Of a DNA stretch of 64,000 nucleotides, positions 2,876 through 20,838 are shown in pieces. The stretch is taken from positions 155,465-219,464 of the IMG/VR virus record IMGVR_UViG_3300045051_000720, one strand, 5' to 3'. The notes under the pieces were generated by a model. That model made no database searches. It saw nothing but the letters and a program-made list of their open reading frames with translations, and was not told the origin of the DNA. The translations under genes were made by a program, and so were the position numbers. How positions within the stretch are numbered: the first letter of the stretch is position 1; every line of letters starts with the position of its first letter.

Positions 2876-4645
2876 TTGAAGACTCTCATCTACCGCTTCC
2901 GACTTGCTCCTAGCGTGCATCAATGTGCCATGATTGAGGCGAGTAACACACAACTGTGTCGGGTATGGAATGCTTTAGTAGGTGCCACCAAGCACGCCGA
3001 GCACGAATGCAAGCATGGACGCAAGACTTGCGTGGTCAAGCGATTAACTGATTTGCTGACCCAGAAGAAAGTCGTCGGGATGCGCGCGGCTGCCGTGAAA
3101 AAGCTGGCAGAATCCAAAGCAATATCATTAACGGATGCCAACAATCTTCTCACCCGCGAGCAGGTCGCCCGTGAGAGTCGCACGATTGTGCGCAAGAATG
3201 GAACCAAAGCGCGACGGTGTTCTATTCGTAAGCTGGCGTTGGCCTATGCCATTGCTACGGTAGGTCATCAGATCAACCGCTTCGGAGTGGAATCCGCCGC
3301 GTTTTGGGGAGTGATTGAAAAATTCAAAACCTCTACCGCCGACTATCCATTGGGCAAACGGGGTGCGCCCCGATTCAAACGAGTGGGTGATAACGTGTCC
3401 ATGCAGGCTCAGACCAAGAATCAACACGTCAAGGAGGGGGTCGTTGACCTATCGCGTTTAGTCGGTTCTAGTTGTTCCTGTGTCCACATGATTCAACACC
3501 GCCCGATTCCAGACGGCGCGATTGTCAAGCAGATGGCCGTGGTTAAGCAAAATGACCGGCTGTTTGTGGCCATCTTTGTTGATGTGCCAGATGCGGCGGC
3601 GCAAAAGAGTTTAATGGCAGCTAGTGGAGCGACGGCTGGTATTGATCCCGGCCGTAAGACGGCAGTGTCGCTCAGTTCTACAGACGGAACAATCCAACAG
3701 GTTGTCTCGCCCCCACTCTTGCGGGACAAACGGTTCATGCGTCGCACGGCGCGGTTGGCACGCAAGTTGGACAGGCAACGCCGCTTTGCCAATCCAGACC
3801 GCTACAATGAGGATGGCACCTTCAAGCGCGGAGCGCGCGGTGTGTGGGTGACAACCAAGGGAATGACTAAGACCCAAAAGCGTGCGAACGATTTGCGTCG
3901 CCGTCTTGTGGATGTACGCACAGAGCACTATCGTCTCAAAGCGCGCGAAGTGTTGAATCAGTTTGACCACGTTGGGATCGGTACATGGCGGCCCAAGGGT
4001 GCGCCGGGTGAAGGACAAGCCAAACGCGCACAGTTGCGCAAGGACGCAGATAACGCTTTGGGTCAATTCGCGGGTATCCTTCGGGACTATGCTGCGCGCA
4101 ATGTGACCCCCAAGAAGATCTACGATATCAATGAGGTCAACACCACCCGTCGTTGCATCAATTGTGGCGAGATGACGGGGCCGAGTGGGTTGTCCAACCT
4201 TGGGGTGCGCGAGTGGACGTGTTCCCACTGTGGTGCCCACCATCAGAGAGACTTTGCTAGTGCGCGAGCTATCGCTCTGCGCACTCAAATCGTGGCCGAT
4301 ACGCATTTGGTTAACGATGGTCCAACGACCAAAATTCAGCCTGTTCGTTATGCCGCAAAGCGTAACAAACGAAGTGGGTTGGTGGCGACACCAATCAATG
4401 TGCCCGTGGAACAGGAAGCGGAGGCCGCGAGGTCCCGTCTGAGTAAAAACGGTGCTCGTGCGAGTGCCCCAGTGGTAGACCATCCGGCCGATTGCACTCG
4501 CGTGCGAAAAGCCAATGCTGACGAAGGCTCTAGCAATATCCTCGCGTCAGAGCCAGCTACCAATGCCTGCAAAGGTAACCATCGCTCGCATAGTTGCGCC
4601 GTAGAACTTGAGTCCACGGTAGTTGTGGAGGAACACTCACTATGA
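2876..4645 (+). CDS. tnpB: TnpB-family RNA-guided endonuclease (IS200/IS605-type), solo, with rearranged RuvC-II
   Basis: N-terminal YRFRLAPS..LCRVWN, RuvC-I GIDPG, RuvC-II region DHVGIGTW, INEVNTTRRCINC..CSHC zinc finger, RuvC-III HQRDFASARAI; lower GC than flanks; no tnpA in window. Confidence 0.9.
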   Translation: MKTLIYRFRLAPSVHQCAMIEASNTQLCRVWNALVGATKHAEHECKHGRKTCVVKRLTDLLTQKKVVGMRAAAVKKLAESKAISLTDANNLLTREQVARESRTIVRKNGTKARRCSIRKLALAYAIATVGHQINRFGVESAAFWGVIEKFKTSTADYPLGKRGAPRFKRVGDNVSMQAQTKNQHVKEGVVDLSRLVGSSCSCVHMIQHRPIPDGAIVKQMAVVKQNDRLFVAIFVDVPDAAAQKSLMAASGATAGIDPGRKTAVSLSSTDGTIQQVVSPPLLRDKRFMRRTARLARKLDRQRRFANPDRYNEDGTFKRGARGVWVTTKGMTKTQKRANDLRRRLVDVRTEHYRLKAREVLNQFDHVGIGTWRPKGAPGEGQAKRAQLRKDADNALGQFAGILRDYAARNVTPKKIYDINEVNTTRRCINCGEMTGPSGLSNLGVREWTCSHCGAHHQRDFASARAIALRTQIVADTHLVNDGPTTKIQPVRYAAKRNKRSGLVATPINVPVEQEAEAARSRLSKNGARASAPVVDHPADCTRVRKANADEGSSNILASEPATNACKGNHRSHSCAVELESTVVVEEHSL

Positions 4646-17470: not shown

Positions 17471-17714
17471 CCACATCTATACCCCAATGGGTTCTCGACG
17501 CCGCCTCCGAGATCGGAGGGATCGGCGAGCATGGTGTCCAGCGCACCGCCCAGATCATCGCCAAGCACTGCCGCGCGAGTGATCGCTACCGGGCTGCTCT
17601 GGTCGCGCTGGTGGGTTCCGATGATCCCAAGACCCTGCGGGGCATCCGCGCCTATACGGTTCAGTATGCCCCCAACGAGACCGCCATTCTCAACGCCATC
17701 GATCTGTTGCTCGA

Positions 17715-18095
17715 ATGAACTGGCGCGCCATGGCCAAGGCCCCGAAGGACGGGACCCATATTCTGCTCGCCTACCCCTCGTTCAGCGACAACGGTCAGGT
17801 CTATGTGGGGATCGGGAGGTGGGTGGATTGCCCACCCCAAGCCGCGGTCGAGCGCGAATGCCGTGAGGCTTATGACCAACACCGTCCTGTTGTGCCTGTC
17901 GATCCGGGCAAACCCCACTGGGAGGTCGCCTATGTCGCGGAGCTGGAGCACGGCGGGGCCTATAACGGCCACTCCTACGAAGCGCGCTCGGCAACCATCC
18001 ACCATCCGTTTGGTTGGATGCCGTTGCCCAAGACGCCCAAGCGTATGTGGCGAGCGACCGCGTCGTTGTCCTACCTGTCCTACCTGAGGGATTGA
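17715..18095 (+). CDS. DUF551-like protein
   Basis: W..MAKAPKDGTHILL and C-terminal WMPLPKTP. Confidence 0.65.
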   Translation: MNWRAMAKAPKDGTHILLAYPSFSDNGQVYVGIGRWVDCPPQAAVERECREAYDQHRPVVPVDPGKPHWEVAYVAELEHGGAYNGHSYEARSATIHHPFGWMPLPKTPKRMWRATASLSYLSYLRD

Positions 18096-18134
18096 CCCTA
18101 TTGCGCGCGCCGCGCGGTGTGTTACCATCCGACC

Positions 18135-18680
18135 ATGAAGACCATCACCCTTCATCGCCTCAAGACCATCCTTGAGAACCTGACCCACGCCACGCCCGTG
18201 GGTGTCATCGCTTTGACCACCGCGGACTGCCGCGCCAAGGGGCCAACCGGCCCCAACCCATGGGGCAAGGATGGCGTCAAGAAACTGACTCGGCTTAACG
18301 CTATGATCGGCACGGACCACGAGCTGTCCATCCAGCGCCAACAGGCCCGCGAGGGTCAGGAAGCCGATTTCCTCGCTGCGCCGCGCTCATGGGGCGTTCG
18401 GATCGGACCGGGGTTGGTTGAGCATAGGGGGCAGTACTATTTGCCTCTCCAACTCAGTCCCGTCAACGCGGTGCGTCCATTATACTTGGTCCCCCGAGAA
18501 CGCGGGGCCAAGACCATCCTCACCGCCGTACCCAAGGAAATCGTTGCACCGTGGTTATCACCCGCGCGGGATGAGCGTGTCTATCAGGGGGTAGTCCGAC
18601 CGGTAGTTAGGCGCGATCTAAGGCTTGACAGTATCGTTAGCATCACTCTTGGCGGGGAGAAGTATCGCATTAGATCTTGA
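18135..18680 (+). CDS. conserved phage hypothetical protein upstream of the pentamer array
   Basis: leaderless ATG 18135; NPWG..VKKLTRLNAMIG..QRQQAREG..F..PRSWG..LVEHRGQYYL motifs. Confidence 0.75.
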   Translation: MKTITLHRLKTILENLTHATPVGVIALTTADCRAKGPTGPNPWGKDGVKKLTRLNAMIGTDHELSIQRQQAREGQEADFLAAPRSWGVRIGPGLVEHRGQYYLPLQLSPVNAVRPLYLVPRERGAKTILTAVPKEIVAPWLSPARDERVYQGVVRPVVRRDLRLDSIVSITLGGEKYRIRS

Positions 18681-18708
18681 CACTAGGCATCGTTTGGCAA
18701 CACTTAAA
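18677..18708 (+). promoter_or_regulatory. probable promoter of the pentamer array
   Basis: TTGACA at 18677, weak -10 (AACACT ~18699); predicted start near 18709 where the array begins. Confidence 0.5.
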
Positions 18709-19105
18709 GGCGGGGCTTGGCAGGGCTGGGCACGGCGGGGCACGGTTAGGCAAGTGTAAGGCAAGGAACGCGGTTCGGTATGGCAACGCGGGGCGACGCC
18801 GGGTTTGGCCGGGCGTGGCCGGGCGCGGCGAGGTTGGGTTAGGCATGGAACATGGTGTGGTGAGGCTGGGTATGGCGGGGCATGAGTAGGGCGAGGAACA
18901 TGGTAGGGCAAGGCTGGGCGCGGCTGAGCAGGGTCAGGTCCGGTACGGCTAGGCTCGGTTAGGCAAGGTCCGGGGCAGCGCGAGGTGTGGCACGGCTTGG
19001 CTGGGCAACGCACGGCCGGGTCCGGCGAGGCAAGGAACGAGGTGAGGTGGGGCAGGGCAGCGCGCGGCGTGGTCAGGCAGGGCTTGGCAGGGCAACGCAA
19101 GGTCC
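18709..19105 (+). ncRNA. GGY-NN pentamer array, candidate guide-RNA locus (VIPR-like)
   Basis: 64 exact GGYNN units plus 7 CGC/AGC variants in 5-nt register, six segments punctuated by GGC(AA/AT/GA)GGAAC; no credible ORF. Confidence 0.85.
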
Positions 19106-19138
19106 GAGGCGCGACGGTCTATCCGCGCACAATTTCTC

Positions 19139-19167
19139 TTGACAGTAGGCTCTAACATCACTACCTT
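19139..19167 (+). promoter_or_regulatory. promoter of RAMP gene
   Basis: TTGACA(19139)-17-TACCTT(19162). Confidence 0.65.
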
Positions 19168-19245
19168 CACATTATCTCCAATAGGCACCTACGCTCAGAC
19201 AATCACGTCAACGAGCATCACTCGTGACCGAACGAGACAACGCAC

Positions 19246-19908
19246 ATGCAAAAGTATAATATCGCACTCGTTGGGGCAAATCCGCTCCTTCTTCATCACG
19301 ACAACATCTCGTGGGCTGGGCTCATGAACGAATGGAATACGGACCCCGCGAACAAAGCCAAGTCCGTCGCGGGCGACGACCGCACTCCCGCTCACCGTTG
19401 GATTGGTTGTCTATACCACGAGGGTGGTCGTCTCATCGTCCCCAGCGATAACCTCATGACTATGCTGCGTGAGGGTGGCGCGCGATGTCCGACTGGAAAG
19501 AAAGGCGCGACGTTCAAACGTCAGACCCAATCCGGGCTGGTTGTCGACCAGAGCGGATGGTCCTTGACTGTTGATGGCAAGGAAATCCCCTATGATCCTA
19601 TTGCCAAGCTTATCGACGAGCCCGACTTCACCAAGCACGAGAAGACGGTAGCGAAGATGGGTTTTGCGCTGTTTGTTAAACGCGCCCGTGTCAACCAGAC
19701 CAAACATGTCCGTGTGCGTCCTCGGTTCGACCGTTGGGAGGCGGCGGGCTCCATTACCGTGTTCGACGATACTATCACTGACCGCGTACTCGAAGACATC
19801 CTCAAGTTTGGAGGTCGTTACGCCGGTCTTGGCGATTGGCGTCCATCATCCCCGAAATCCCCCGGACCATTCGGAACCTTCACGGTGACCGTTTCCCCCG
19901 CATCATGA
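19246..19908 (+). CDS. stand-alone RAMP/Cas7-like protein (Vipr-like candidate effector)
   Basis: N-terminal strand YNIALVGANPLLLH, IVPSDNLMTMLREGG, RVRPRFDRWE strand and C-terminal Gly-rich loop GGRYAGLGDWRP..PGPFGTFTV. Confidence 0.8.
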   Translation: MQKYNIALVGANPLLLHHDNISWAGLMNEWNTDPANKAKSVAGDDRTPAHRWIGCLYHEGGRLIVPSDNLMTMLREGGARCPTGKKGATFKRQTQSGLVVDQSGWSLTVDGKEIPYDPIAKLIDEPDFTKHEKTVAKMGFALFVKRARVNQTKHVRVRPRFDRWEAAGSITVFDDTITDRVLEDILKFGGRYAGLGDWRPSSPKSPGPFGTFTVTVSPAS

Positions 19909-20378
19909 GCGCAACAACCAAACTCTTCGGCGGCGGCGTTCCTACTCAACCCGAGGTTGAAAGCCTGATCAAACGATTTGGTGTTCCTGCGGTAGGGACA
20001 TCGATTCTCTATGTCGATATTGCGGCTACCATTGGACATCCTGTTCGTAGCAATCGCTATCTCGCTGTAGTATCAAGGTGGCGTAAACGTCTGTTCCAGC
20101 AGCATAATCTATTGCTGGACCCTATTCATGGTGAATCCTATACGGTCTGTAACAACAGCCAACGTATTTCCCACAGCACTGGCAAGTACAAAAGCGGCCT
20201 TCGGCATATTCGACGTGCGTCCGAAGTAGCTGCTCGGACCGACACAGAAGGATTGCTTCCCGACGAGATGCGGGCTCGCGACCATATCGTCAAGACCGGT
20301 AATGCTTTGCAGCTAGCGGCGGCCACTGCCGCACGGCAACTCAAATATGTTGCGCCGGGGCTACCTCAGTCAACGTGA
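19905..20378 (+). CDS. RAMP-coupled accessory protein
   Basis: ATGA overlap with RAMP stop; 157 aa, basic, helical. Confidence 0.7.
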   Translation: MSATTKLFGGGVPTQPEVESLIKRFGVPAVGTSILYVDIAATIGHPVRSNRYLAVVSRWRKRLFQQHNLLLDPIHGESYTVCNNSQRISHSTGKYKSGLRHIRRASEVAARTDTEGLLPDEMRARDHIVKTGNALQLAAATAARQLKYVAPGLPQST

Positions 20379-20400
20379 AGATGTCACGTACCGTTTTACC

Positions 20401-20838
20401 ATGACCATCGTTGACACCTCCACCCGCCTCCCCACCACCCCCGGACCCTACGCGGTTCTGGTCAAACCCGCACAGGGCTACCACCGCGCCATTGAGACCG
20501 GCGTGAGCTGGGATGGGTCATGGAAAGGGACCGATGATCCCGTCGTCGCGTGGGTTGACACCGCCGCGCGCGTTGCCGTTGTGCCTTCTCCGACTCAGGC
20601 GGTTGAACCCTCATCCTATTCCCTCACCCTCGTGGGCTTCGATCCTACCAGCAAGATCGGCGTGATCAAGCTCGTGCGCGAGCTGACGGGGCTCGGGTTG
20701 GCTGAATCCAAAGCGACGGTCGAGGCCCTTGCGATCAAACCCCTCATGATCAAGGAGAATGCTTCTCGCGCCGAGGTAACCGCACTGGACACCCGTCTGC
20801 GCGCGGCGGGTGGGGTGACCAAACTGGAGGCCGTATGA
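20401..20838 (+). CDS. ribosomal protein L7/L12 C-terminal-domain fusion protein
   Basis: YSLTLVGFDPTSKIGVIKLVRELTGLGLAESKATVE..P..IKENASRAE..L..AGG matches bL12 CTD; unrelated N-terminal domain. Confidence 0.8.
   Translation: MTIVDTSTRLPTTPGPYAVLVKPAQGYHRAIETGVSWDGSWKGTDDPVVAWVDTAARVAVVPSPTQAVEPSSYSLTLVGFDPTSKIGVIKLVRELTGLGLAESKATVEALAIKPLMIKENASRAEVTALDTRLRAAGGVTKLEAV

What the first reader, a model, noticed from the sequence alone, without database searches (positions are those of the whole stretch)
18754..19040. Array is punctuated into six guide-sized segments
Seen: GGCAAGGAAC (18760), GGCATGGAAC (18842), GGCGAGGAAC (18890) and GGCAAGGAAC (19029) each add a 7-nt unit that shifts the register by +2. 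A fifth +2 shift occurs at 18972. Segments contain about 7-15 pentamers. NN strings: seg2 TC AT AA GG GA CG TT CG GT CG GC GA TG TA AT; seg4 AG AA TG GC TG AG CA CC AC TA TC TA AA CC; seg5 GT AC TT TG AA AC CG CC GA AA; seg6 GA GG AG AG GC GT CA AG TT AG AA AA CC. Inference: GGAAC marks processing or filament-capping sites, giving several distinct guides from one transcript.
Basis: partly seen in the sequence, partly recalled or inferred. Interest (0 to 1): 0.8.

Follow-up and report, generated by a model that had tools for sequence, protein, structure and literature searches.

The report
Punctuated VIPR guide-RNA array in phage
The pentamer array is the guide-RNA array of a phage VIPR system (a Cas7-like protein guided by GGY/NN repeat RNA, described in 2026 preprints), and a conserved GG-AA-C break splits it into six guide-sized blocks; this extends a known system and is not a new one.

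Summary
Window 18709-19107 (+) carries about 75 GGYNN pentamers in six register blocks.

Two junctions carry an extra +1 shift, a sixth 7-nt unit lies at 19101, and the array starts at 18709.

The gene just downstream (19246-19908) is a homolog of the SUSP1 Vipr protein. It has a Cas7-like fold and keeps the GGY-binding residues. The locus is therefore a VIPR system.

Of 79 other viral loci encoding this protein, 77 have same-strand arrays and 49 have multi-block arrays. The dominant break is a 7-nt unit, GG-A(A)-Y-NN, preceded by a constrained GGC-R-W pentamer. Other NN positions carry about 0 bits. Blocks bounded by two breaks have a median of 9 pentamers. Related phages share leader and end but carry different blocks.

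In the published structure G1 and G2 are held by one protomer and Y3 by the next, so the AA insert falls at the protomer joint.

No RNA data and no natural targets were found, so cleavage or capping remains inferred. This is a new member of a known kind, of moderate interest.

The parts
18624..18647 (+). Promoter-like box CTTGACAGTATCGTTAGCATCACT, a near-duplicate of the box in front of vipr at 19138
   Evidence: the pattern CTTGACA-N(8-16)-CAYCACT matches only at 18624 and 19138 (0.01 expected). Its function is inferred.
18676..18708 (+). Promoter-like box for the array: -35 TTGACA at 18677-18682 and a -10-like AACACTT at about 18699-18705. The first GGC follows at 18709.
   Evidence: CTTGACA occurs 27 times in the window against 5.9 expected; several copies have TAnnnT-type -10 boxes at a 16-18 nt spacing. 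The start site is inferred, not mapped.
18709..19107 (+). vrRNA array: about 75 GGYNN pentamers in six register blocks, each closed by a 7-nt unit
18709..18753 (+). Block 1: 9 pentamers (NN: GG TT AG TG AC GG AC TA AA)
18754..18771 (+). Long junction GTGTAA GGCAA GGAAC GC: a +1 shift (one base inside a GG, G-T-G) two units upstream of the +2 unit GGAACGC at 18765-18771
   Evidence: The same 18-nt class makes up 18 of 214 junctions in related loci.
18772..18846 (+). Block 2: 15 pentamers. The last one (GGCAT, 18842-18846) is the constrained closing pentamer.
18847..18853 (+). 7-nt unit GGAACAT (+2 shift)
18854..18883 (+). Block 3: 6 pentamers
18884..18901 (+). Long junction GAGTAG GGCGA GGAAC AT (a +1 shift, then the +2 unit GGAACAT at 18895-18901)
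18902..18966 (+). Block 4: 13 pentamers ending in the closing pentamer GGCAA (18962-18966)
18967..18973 (+). Degenerate 7-nt unit GGTCCGG (+2 shift). It has the same form as the terminal unit at 19101.
18974..19033 (+). Block 5: 12 pentamers ending in the closing pentamer GGCAA (19029-19033)
19034..19040 (+). 7-nt unit GGAACGA (+2 shift)
19041..19100 (+). Block 6: 12 pentamers ending in the degenerate closing pentamer CGCAA (19096-19100)
19101..19107 (+). Terminal 7-nt unit GGTCCGA
   Evidence: relatives end their arrays with GGACCGG, GGTCCGG or GGACCGA in the same place.
19108..19140 (+). Terminal hairpin (stem 19109-19113 paired with 19124-19128) followed by ACAATTTCTCTT. It is either a terminator or the 3' cap of the last guide.
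   Evidence: 5 conserved pairs in 6 loci, with one compensatory C-G to U-A change; the fold energy alone is not significant (z = 0.53); the simple terminator scan did not list it.
19138..19162 (+). Promoter-like box CTTGACAGTAGGCTCTAACATCACT in front of vipr
19246..19908 (+). vipr: a 220-aa Cas7-like RAMP, homolog of SUSP1 Vipr
   Evidence: -: both proteins match phrog_4652.
- 22% identity to SUSP1 Vipr over the full length, E = 9e-12.
- the AF2 model has pLDDT 89.9, and its PDB matches with E <= 0.001 are CRISPR effector-complex chains, with Csm3-type subunits and type VII and type IV backbone subunits on top.
- H17, R158, D197, W198 and R199 are invariant across the family.
19905..20378 (+). 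vap-like accessory gene (157 aa). Its start overlaps the vipr stop.
   Evidence: -: 43% identity (E = 2e-31) to the gene after vipr in L213.
- conserved in 6 loci.
- no similarity to SUSP1 vap1.
- only weak winged-helix-like structural matches, which are a lead and nothing more.

Best explanation
**What it is.** This is the guide-RNA (vrRNA) array of a VIPR system carried by a 219-kb phage contig from a rhizosphere metagenome.

**Transcription (inferred).** One promoter-like box at 18676 would drive a roughly 400-nt G-rich transcript that ends at a short conserved hairpin (19108-19140). A second, similar box at 19138 would drive vipr (19246-19908) and a vap-like gene (19905-20378).

**Filament assembly (by homology with SUSP1).** Vipr protomers should polymerise on the RNA one per pentamer. 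They would hold each GGY and present the NN pair for gapped pairing with DNA.

**Role of the punctuation (inferred).** Each block ends with a constrained pentamer GGC-R-W and then GG followed by a 2-nt insert (AA, here twice TC) before the next Y. In the published structure G1 and G2 are held by protomer n and Y3 by protomer n+1. The insert therefore sits at the protomer joint and should end one filament and start the next. The result would be six guide modules, with 9, 14, 5, 12, 11 and 11 pentamers ahead of the closing pentamer.

**Fate of the linker (inferred).** I think the exposed linker is most likely then cut by a cellular RNase or by Vipr itself, giving separate ribonucleoproteins. An uncut string of filaments is also possible.

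**Long junctions.** Those after blocks 1 and 3 add a 1-nt insert inside a GG (G-W-G) two units upstream. Its role is unknown.

**Shown versus inferred.** Shown here are the sequence grammar, its conservation, its association with the Vipr homolog and cassette-like turnover. Transcription limits, filament breakage, cleavage and targeting are inferred.
For: **The protein**
- It matches phrog_4652, the family that SUSP1 Vipr also matches.
- BLASTP to SUSP1 Vipr gives E = 9e-12. SUSP1 residues H17, R138, D177, W178 and R179 align with H17, R158, D197, W198 and R199 here, and these are invariant in 29 family members.
- The AF2 model has pLDDT 89.9. Its 41 PDB matches with E <= 0.001 are CRISPR effector-complex chains; type III Csm and type VII backbone subunits lead, followed by type IV-A and a gRAMP, and Foldseek probability is about 1 for the best of them.

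**Association with arrays**
- 77 of 79 other viral loci with a homolog have a same-strand array next to the gene, and none has one on the opposite strand. 49 have multi-block arrays.
- 63 of 120 loci found by the repeat pattern alone encode a Vipr homolog within the fetched stretch.

**Punctuation**
- 135 of 214 junctions are exactly 7 nt and 103 contain GGAAC.
- With GG-only anchoring, 99 of the 167 distinct junctions tallied are 7-nt units. After the GG these read AA 64 times, AC 14 and AT 8, and position 5 is C or T in 97 of 99.
- The logo from 132 sites reads GGC-R-A|GGA-A-C|R-N, while other NN positions carry about 0 bits.

**Size and turnover**
- 137 blocks bounded by two such units have a median of 9 pentamers and an interquartile range of 8-11. 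Published vrRNAs have 9-16 repeats.
- L168, L170 and L172 share leader and terminal hairpin but carry different blocks. Only the first block is shared, between L168 and L172.

**Structural logic and tail grammar**
- Published structure: G1 and G2 bind one protomer, Y3 binds the next, and the Y pocket excludes purines.
- In SUSP1, LESphi2 and LittleE the repeat tract also ends with a constrained unit followed by GG and a purine at the start of the tail.

**Transcription unit**
- CTTGACA boxes are enriched in the window.
- The terminal hairpin is conserved, with one compensatory change.

**No self-target**
- No self-target exists in the window, as reported for other VIPR systems.
Against: - No RNA-level data exist. 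No RNA run could be listed, and the DNA runs gave only fragments.
- No natural target was found for any block under the published 1-nt-skip rule.
- Block 3 has only 6 pentamers, below the published 9-16.
- Two of the six units read GGTCC. A T at position 3 is a legal Y, so the purine-exclusion argument does not apply there and the exact place of the insert is ambiguous.
- The first block is not preceded by a 7-nt unit, whereas many relatives have one there. Whether the unit belongs to the upstream or the downstream guide is therefore unsettled.
- The terminal hairpin is weak thermodynamically.
- Promoter assignments rest on consensus only, and the sigma-70 scan did not call them.
Confidence: 0.72

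Rival explanations
1. The whole array is one very long guide. Vipr coats all ~75 units as a single filament, and the register shifts are tolerated slippage or indel scars with no function.
For: The structure preprint says that vrRNA length dictates filament length and that natural vrRNAs reach up to 30 repeats. Internal degeneracy of vrRNAs is reported, and degenerate units such as CGCGG and AGCAG occur here.
Against: - Random indels would not be 7-nt units with A at position 3 in 89 of 99 cases and C or T at position 5 in 97 of 99.
- They would not be preceded by a constrained pentamer.
- They would not be spaced at a median of 9 units with an interquartile range of 8-11.
- Blocks turn over as cassettes between related phages.
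- 75 units is far above any reported guide.
Confidence: 0.07
2. The blocks are separate guides, but the 7-nt unit with its closing pentamer is a 5' handle or nucleation site of the downstream guide. It is not a 3' stop of the upstream one, and the RNA stays uncut as beads on a string.
For: Many relatives have a GGANC-NN unit in front of the first block (L124, L126, L127, L128, L130 and L168). The first two bases after the C are weakly constrained (R at +5). No nuclease domain or ribozyme was found.
Against: - In this window the first block has no upstream unit while the last block has a downstream one.
- In tail-bearing relatives and in SUSP1 the GG-purine unit opens the 3' tail.
- The published vrRNA architecture places the constant part at the 3' end, and SUSP1 vrRNAs are discrete species of about 100 nt.
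Confidence: 0.17
3. The repeat is not an RNA guide array at all. It is a DNA-level element, such as a G-quadruplex or R-loop-prone origin, protein-binding iterons or a packaging site, or else a coding repeat.
For: The G-rich strand has GG every 5 nt. ORFs can be drawn across it (18618-19100 on the minus strand and 18677-18889 on the plus strand), and JGI called the homologous array in L213 as a 117-aa gene.
Against: - A period of 5 with +1 and +2 shifts cannot be a conserved reading frame.
- The array is always on the coding strand of an adjacent Vipr homolog (77 of 79 loci and never opposite).
- The protein keeps the GGY-binding residues.
- The variable and constant positions match the published vrRNA grammar.
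Confidence: 0.02
4. The array is a set of decoy or competitor vrRNAs aimed at hijacking the Vipr proteins of other phages, and does not arm the adjacent Vipr.
For: Solo vrRNAs that redirect a foreign VIPR are described in satellites and phages (abstract).
Against: The array sits directly upstream of its own vipr-vap operon behind a near-duplicate promoter box. The same arrangement holds across the family. Solo vrRNAs are defined by the absence of a nearby vipr.
Confidence: 0.02

Closest known systems
VIPR systems of the SUSP1 / P. fulva kind (type II; bioRxiv 10.64898/2026.04.26.720920, 10.64898/2026.04.26.720927 and 10.64898/2026.10.15.759431)
   Same: - Phage-encoded.
- Small Cas7-like Vipr protein with the same GGY-contact residues.
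- Guide made of GGY/NN pentamers, with the GGY part constant and the NN part hypervariable.
- Guide size of about 9-16 units.
- A small accessory gene directly after vipr.
- The repeat tract closes with a constrained unit and then GG followed by a purine.
- No self-target.
   Different: - SUSP1 vrRNAs are separate units of about 100 nt, each with a tail of about 40 nt whose pseudoknot caps the filament.
- Here six guides abut, separated by 7 to 18 nt without predicted structure, and only the last is followed by a hairpin.
- The accessory protein shows no similarity to vap1.
- Vipr identity is only 22%.
[quoted passage not shown]
   Same: Consecutive vrRNAs without spacers, where the end of one marks the start of the next (legend read). 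This is probably the same architecture, or a closely related one.
   Different: - The figure itself is not held, so identity cannot be checked.
- The legend speaks of 1-nt overlapping positions. Here the breaks are +2, or +1 followed by +2.
- The preprint says only the ribozyme and single-vrRNA architectures were confirmed by sRNA-seq.
- The text I could search mentions neither GGAAC nor a linker or register rule.
CRISPR arrays with Class 1 Cas7 backbones
   Same: RAMP protomers polymerise on a guide. Variable guide modules are separated by a short constant element. Related genomes share the array ends but differ in modules. The fold matches Csm3 and Cas7.
   Different: - The constant element is 7-12 nt; from my own knowledge CRISPR repeats are far longer, typically a few dozen nt.
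- No cas1, cas2 or Cas6 was seen among the genes I scanned next to the array.
- The guide pairs non-contiguously.
- There is no evidence of acquisition machinery.
Hammerhead-ribozyme-interspersed vrRNA arrays (fig. S19 of the discovery preprint)
   Same: Several vrRNAs come from one transcript, separated by a processing element.
   Different: No Rfam family, hammerheads included, reaches its gathering score anywhere in the window. The junctions are too short for a ribozyme.
TRAP-trp leader RNA (own knowledge, not tested here)
   Same: A protein oligomer reads a conserved triplet repeated with 2-3 nt spacers, one subunit per repeat.
   Different: TRAP is a closed ring that uses the RNA for attenuation. 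The spacers there carry no guide information, and the protein fold is unrelated.

Membership tests
VIPR system | Vipr protein: a minimal RAMP (RRM core, G-loop, thumb) homologous to SUSP1 Vipr | tested here: met
   - phrog_4652 matches both proteins.
- BLASTP E = 9e-12 over the full length.
- AF2 pLDDT 89.9, with Foldseek matches at E <= 0.001 all to CRISPR effector-complex chains, led by type III Csm and type VII backbone subunits.
VIPR system | Residues that hold G1, G2 and Y3 (SUSP1 H17, R138, D177, W178, R179) | tested here: met
   They align with H17, R158, D197, W198 and R199, all of which are invariant in 29 family members. Residue roles are taken from the structure preprint.
VIPR system | vrRNA gene: tandem GGY/NN pentamers next to vipr on the same strand, with GGY constant and NN hypervariable | tested here: met
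   for the window. Searches show 77 of 79 related loci with an array and none on the opposite strand. One search shows NN at about 0 bits and GGY at 1.2-2 bits.
VIPR system | Guide length of about 9-16 repeats | tested here: met
   The window's blocks have 9, 15, 6, 13, 12 and 12 pentamers. The family median is 9 with an interquartile range of 8-11. Block 3 is short.
VIPR system | Accessory vap gene in an operon with vipr | tested here: inconclusive
   A conserved 150-157-aa gene overlaps the vipr stop. It shows no similarity to vap1 and matches no Pfam or PHROG family. Winged-helix-like matches are only weak.
VIPR system | vrRNAs are expressed and bind Vipr | not testable with these tools
   No RNA run could be listed. 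This needs an experiment.
VIPR system | NN pairs match natural targets under the 1-nt-skip rule, typically in competing mobile elements | tested here: inconclusive
   - No self-target was found, and nothing above the controls in 1.5 Mb of held loci.
- 10-unit seeds of blocks 2, 4, 5 and 6 gave no exact hit in viral contigs.
- The block 2 seed hit 10 metagenome contigs, but the flanking units matched only at chance level.
- Block 1 gave one exact 18-base hit, where about one is expected by chance on my rough estimate of the collection's size.
- Only exact seeds could be searched.
VIPR type II (SUSP1-like) vrRNA architecture | Each vrRNA carries an invariable structured 3' tail of about 40 nt (a pseudoknot) | tested here: not met
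   Internal junctions are 7 or 18 nt and unstructured. The array as a whole is not significantly structured (z = -1.6). Only the last block is followed by a 5-bp hairpin.
Ribozyme-interspersed vrRNA array | Hammerhead ribozyme between guides | tested here: not met
   No Rfam match at the gathering threshold in the whole window.
CRISPR array | Direct repeats a few dozen nt long alternating with contiguous spacers, together with cas genes | tested here: not met
   The constant element is 7-12 nt and the variable part is itself a 5-nt repeat. The genes scanned beside the array gave no cas family apart from the Cas7-like fold of Vipr; the whole window was not scanned protein by protein. The repeat-length criterion is from my own knowledge.

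The most novel reading that the evidence does not exclude
A 2-nt insert between G2 and Y3 of one GGY motif, together with a constrained closing pentamer, is by itself a sufficient stop-and-start signal. It would partition one transcript into several Vipr filaments with no structured tail, no ribozyme and no dedicated processing enzyme. That would make it the smallest known 'repeat' of a guide array, and a plausible intermediate between single tailed vrRNAs and repeat-spacer arrays. The G-W-G insert of the long junctions would then be a second, distinct punctuation mark.
Probability: 0.35. Interest if true: 0.65.

Novelty: new member of a known kind. Interest (0 to 1): 0.45.

Why it matters
VIPR was described only in 2026, and so far only tailed (type II), ribozyme-separated and single-guide architectures have RNA-level support.

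This locus and about 50 relatives show a compact, tail-less way of packing many guides behind one promoter. They also give an explicit grammar that can be tested directly:
- guide units, then
- a closing pentamer GGC-R-W, then
- GG-AA-Y.

If the 2-nt insert alone sets filament boundaries, two things follow. It would explain how guide length is defined without a capping pseudoknot. It would also offer a very simple way to multiplex guides in engineered VIPR tools.

The analysis also shows that gene callers annotate these arrays as protein genes.

Tried and rejected
- **Known RNA families.** Rfam found nothing at the gathering threshold in the window.
- **Near-identical phage genomes.** Megablast of 17500-20500 against 50,697 phage records found no match.
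- **RNA ends.** Two run searches listed no RNA run. Laying the four DNA runs gave only short fragments and one identical 234-nt unitig, which says nothing about processing or variation.
- **Self-targets.** The best scores under the skip 0, 1 and 2 rules were no better than for shuffled unit orders.
- **Cross-targeting among held loci.** 684 distinct guides were searched against about 1.5 Mb with compressed-sequence BLAST. Skip 1 gave a slight excess of 16-19-base matches but no near-full-length hit, so this is not convincing.
- **Collection scans.** Exact 1-nt-skip seeds gave no hits or chance-level hits. All scan quotas were used. A mismatch-tolerant search was not possible.
- **NN composition against codon positions.** The best Pearson correlation was 0.33, for codon positions 1-2, which is too weak to support or reject coding targets. 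C is depleted at the first N.
- **Secondary structure.** Neither the junctions nor the whole array show significant structure.
- **vap function.** There were no Pfam or PHROG matches. Foldseek's best hit had E = 0.06, among scattered winged-helix proteins.
- **VIPR type.** The preprint's supplementary tables are not held, so the type (I-VII) could not be assigned.

Full report
**1. The observation**

Reading 18300-19500 and indexing every GGY by coordinate mod 5 shows an uninterrupted run of GGYNN pentamers from 18709 to 19105 on the + strand.
Each GGAAC is followed by two bases and then by GGY units in a register moved by +2.
- The fifth +2 shift is at 18972-18973.
Segment 5 lacks its first two units.
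- The feature is not chance. A six-unit pattern with at most one mismatch gives 37 overlapping matches, all in this array, against 0.01 expected. GGAAC occurs four times in about 400 nt against 0.32 expected, each time at a register shift.
The array starts at 18709. The junctions at 18754 and 18884 carry an additional +1 shift (GTGTAA and GAGTAG), two pentamers before GGAAC. A sixth 7-nt unit, GGTCCGA, closes the last block at 19101.

**2. Context**

- The window is part of a 219-kb viral contig (IMGVR_UViG_3300045051_000720) from a rhizosphere metagenome.
- It has phage genes: a tailspike, a lysozyme, PhoH and many small ORFs.
- The array lies between CTTGACA boxes, which are enriched in the window at 27 against 5.9 expected. 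One is at 18676, 33 nt before the first GGC. A near-duplicate pair lies at 18624 and 19138.
- The array ends in a short hairpin plus a T-rich tract (19108-19140). The hairpin is conserved in relatives, with one compensatory change.
- ORFs drawn across the array cannot be genes, because a 5-nt period with +1 and +2 shifts is not a reading frame. JGI nevertheless called the homologous array in L213 as a 117-aa gene.

**3. What it is**

A literature search led to three 2026 preprints that describe VIPR systems. In these, a small RAMP protein (Vipr) polymerises on vrRNAs made of 9-16 GGY/NN pentamers. The NN pairs read double-stranded DNA with one skipped base per pair.

The 220-aa gene just downstream of the array (19246-19908) is a Vipr homolog:
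- It and SUSP1 Vipr both match phrog_4652.
- BLASTP aligns the two proteins end to end (22% identity, E = 9e-12).
- The SUSP1 residues that hold G1, G2 and Y3 (H17, R138, D177, W178, R179) align with H17, R158, D197, W198 and R199. These are invariant in 29 family members.
- An AF2 model (pLDDT 89.9) has 41 PDB matches with E <= 0.001, all CRISPR effector-complex chains. Type III Csm and type VII backbone subunits are on top, with type IV-A and a gRAMP further down.

The next gene (19905-20378) overlaps the vipr stop and is conserved after vipr in relatives. It is unrelated to SUSP1 vap1 and gives only weak winged-helix-like matches.

**4. Is the punctuation real biology?**

I fetched 79 other viral loci encoding homologs at 47-67% identity, plus closer ones from metagenomes.
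- **Association.** 77 of 79 have an array on the gene's strand beside the gene and none has one on the other strand. 49 have arrays of several register blocks.
- **Junction length and sequence.** Of 214 junctions, 135 are exactly 7 nt and 103 contain GGAAC. An 18-nt class (GAGCAG GGCGA GGAAC GC), equivalent to the window's two long junctions, accounts for 18.
- **Unbiased anchoring.** When blocks are anchored on GG alone, to avoid biasing position 3, 99 of the 167 distinct junctions tallied are 7-nt units. The two bases after GG are AA in 64, AC in 14 and AT in 8. Position 5 is C or T in 97 of 99.
- **Logo.** A logo from 132 distinct sites reads GGC-R-A | GG-A-A-C | R-N. All other NN positions carry about 0 bits. 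The pentamer before the break is therefore part of the constant element.
- **Block size.** Blocks bounded by two such units (n = 137) have a median of 9 pentamers and an interquartile range of 8-11. This is the size of experimentally defined vrRNAs.
- **Turnover.** L168, L170 and L172 share the same leader and terminal hairpin but carry different blocks. Only the first block is shared, between L168 and L172. That is cassette-like turnover with breakpoints at the punctuation.
- **The two GGTCC units.** GGTCCGG and GGTCCGA in the window match the GGACCGG, GGTCCGG and GGACCGA units that close the arrays of relatives.

**5. Mechanism**

In YNNGG register the 7-nt unit is simply an AA inserted between ...YRAGG and YNNGG.... 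In the published filament G1 and G2 are bound by one protomer and Y3 by the neighbouring protomer, whose pocket excludes purines. The insert therefore lies at the protomer joint and should interrupt the filament. This is my inference.

The same grammar appears in tail-bearing relatives. In SUSP1, LESphi2 and LittleE the repeat tract ends in a constrained unit followed by GG and a purine, which opens the structured tail. In one LittleE vrRNA the tail begins GGAAC. The compact arrays thus look like tailed vrRNAs whose tail has shrunk to two bases.

Neither the junctions nor the array as a whole show significant predicted structure, and no ribozyme is present. Whether the linker is cut, and by what, cannot be said from sequence.

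**6. What could not be shown**

- No RNA run could be listed, and the DNA runs gave only fragments.
- Under the published xNN rule there is no self-target.
- Exact 10-unit seeds for blocks 2, 4, 5 and 6 gave nothing meaningful. Each was run against the viral contigs and against one further collection: the metagenome contigs for blocks 2 and 6, the genome contigs for blocks 4 and 5.
- The ten metagenome hits of block 2 encode a common peptide and do not extend beyond the seed.
- Block 1 has one exact 18-base hit (L221), mostly outside coding sequence, where about one is expected by chance on my rough estimate of the collection's size.
- NN composition is uninformative about coding targets.

**7. 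Comparison and novelty**

The locus is a member of the VIPR family. It is not of the SUSP1 tailed architecture, because the tail feature was tested and not met.

[quoted passage not shown] This is probably that architecture or a close relative of it. The searchable text gives no GGAAC, linker or register rule, and the figure and tables are not held.

The closest cultured relatives in the phage collection (LESphi2, LittleE, Trine) have spaced, tailed vrRNAs.

**Verdict.** This is a new member of a known kind, with a testable grammar for guide boundaries.

Noticed in passing
window 2876-4645 (+): A 589-aa ORF matches the Cas12f1-like TNB domain and OrfB_IS605, and phrog_506 (transposase, E = 1e-34). 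This is a TnpB-like RNA-guided nuclease gene in the same phage contig as the VIPR locus.
   Followed up: no
window 20347-20838 (+): A 163-aa ORF directly after the vap-like gene carries a ribosomal protein L7/L12 C-terminal domain (PF00542, E = 5e-14). No L7/L12 domain is on record for the genes after vap in L213.
   Followed up: partly
window 18624-18647 and 19138-19162 (+): A near-duplicate promoter-like box, CTTGACAGTA...CATCACT, lies 85 nt before the array and again directly after it, in front of vipr. Array and operon may be co-regulated, or the array may have been inserted behind a duplicated promoter.
   Followed up: partly
window 18967-18985 (+): The internal junction GGTCCGG GGCAGCGCGAGG resembles the terminal module GGTCCGA GGCGCGACGG at 19101-19117. 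The six-block array may be a fusion of a four-block and a two-block array that lost the first terminal hairpin.
   Followed up: no
window 2761-58850, both strands: There are 27 CTTGACA boxes against 5.9 expected. Several have a shared spacer motif GTTCAAC and a TAnnnT-type -10 box (for example at 2839, 5961, 7499, 11051, 21998 and 58850), which suggests a phage promoter family.
   Followed up: partly
L213 2629-2982; window 18618-19100 (-) and 18677-18889 (+): Gene callers annotate vrRNA arrays as protein genes. The JGI 117-aa 'gene' in L213 is the array itself, and similar spurious ORFs span the array in the window.
   Followed up: yes
Only 63 of the 120 show a Vipr homolog within the fetched stretch. 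The rest may have divergent Viprs or be solo arrays.
   Followed up: partly
L221 11901-11926 (-): This is the only exact 1-nt-skip match to all 9 NN pairs of block 1. It lies just past the stop of a 314-aa ORF with no Pfam match, on a 14.5-kb viral contig with 61% GC. About one such hit is expected by chance on my rough estimate of the collection's size.
   Followed up: partly
L127 3150-3470: Two neighbouring blocks are partial duplicates, including their preceding GGAACCC unit (GGTCG GGCAA GGCAT GGCTT GGTGA GGCGG... and GGTCG GGCAG GGCAA GGCTT GGTGA GGCGG...). This suggests that blocks duplicate together with their punctuation and then diverge.
   Followed up: no
family arrays (333 distinct blocks): C is depleted at the first N of the NN pair: CA, CC, CG and CT together make up about 16% of NN pairs. 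The cause is unexplained and may be an RNA-level or protein-contact constraint.
   Followed up: no
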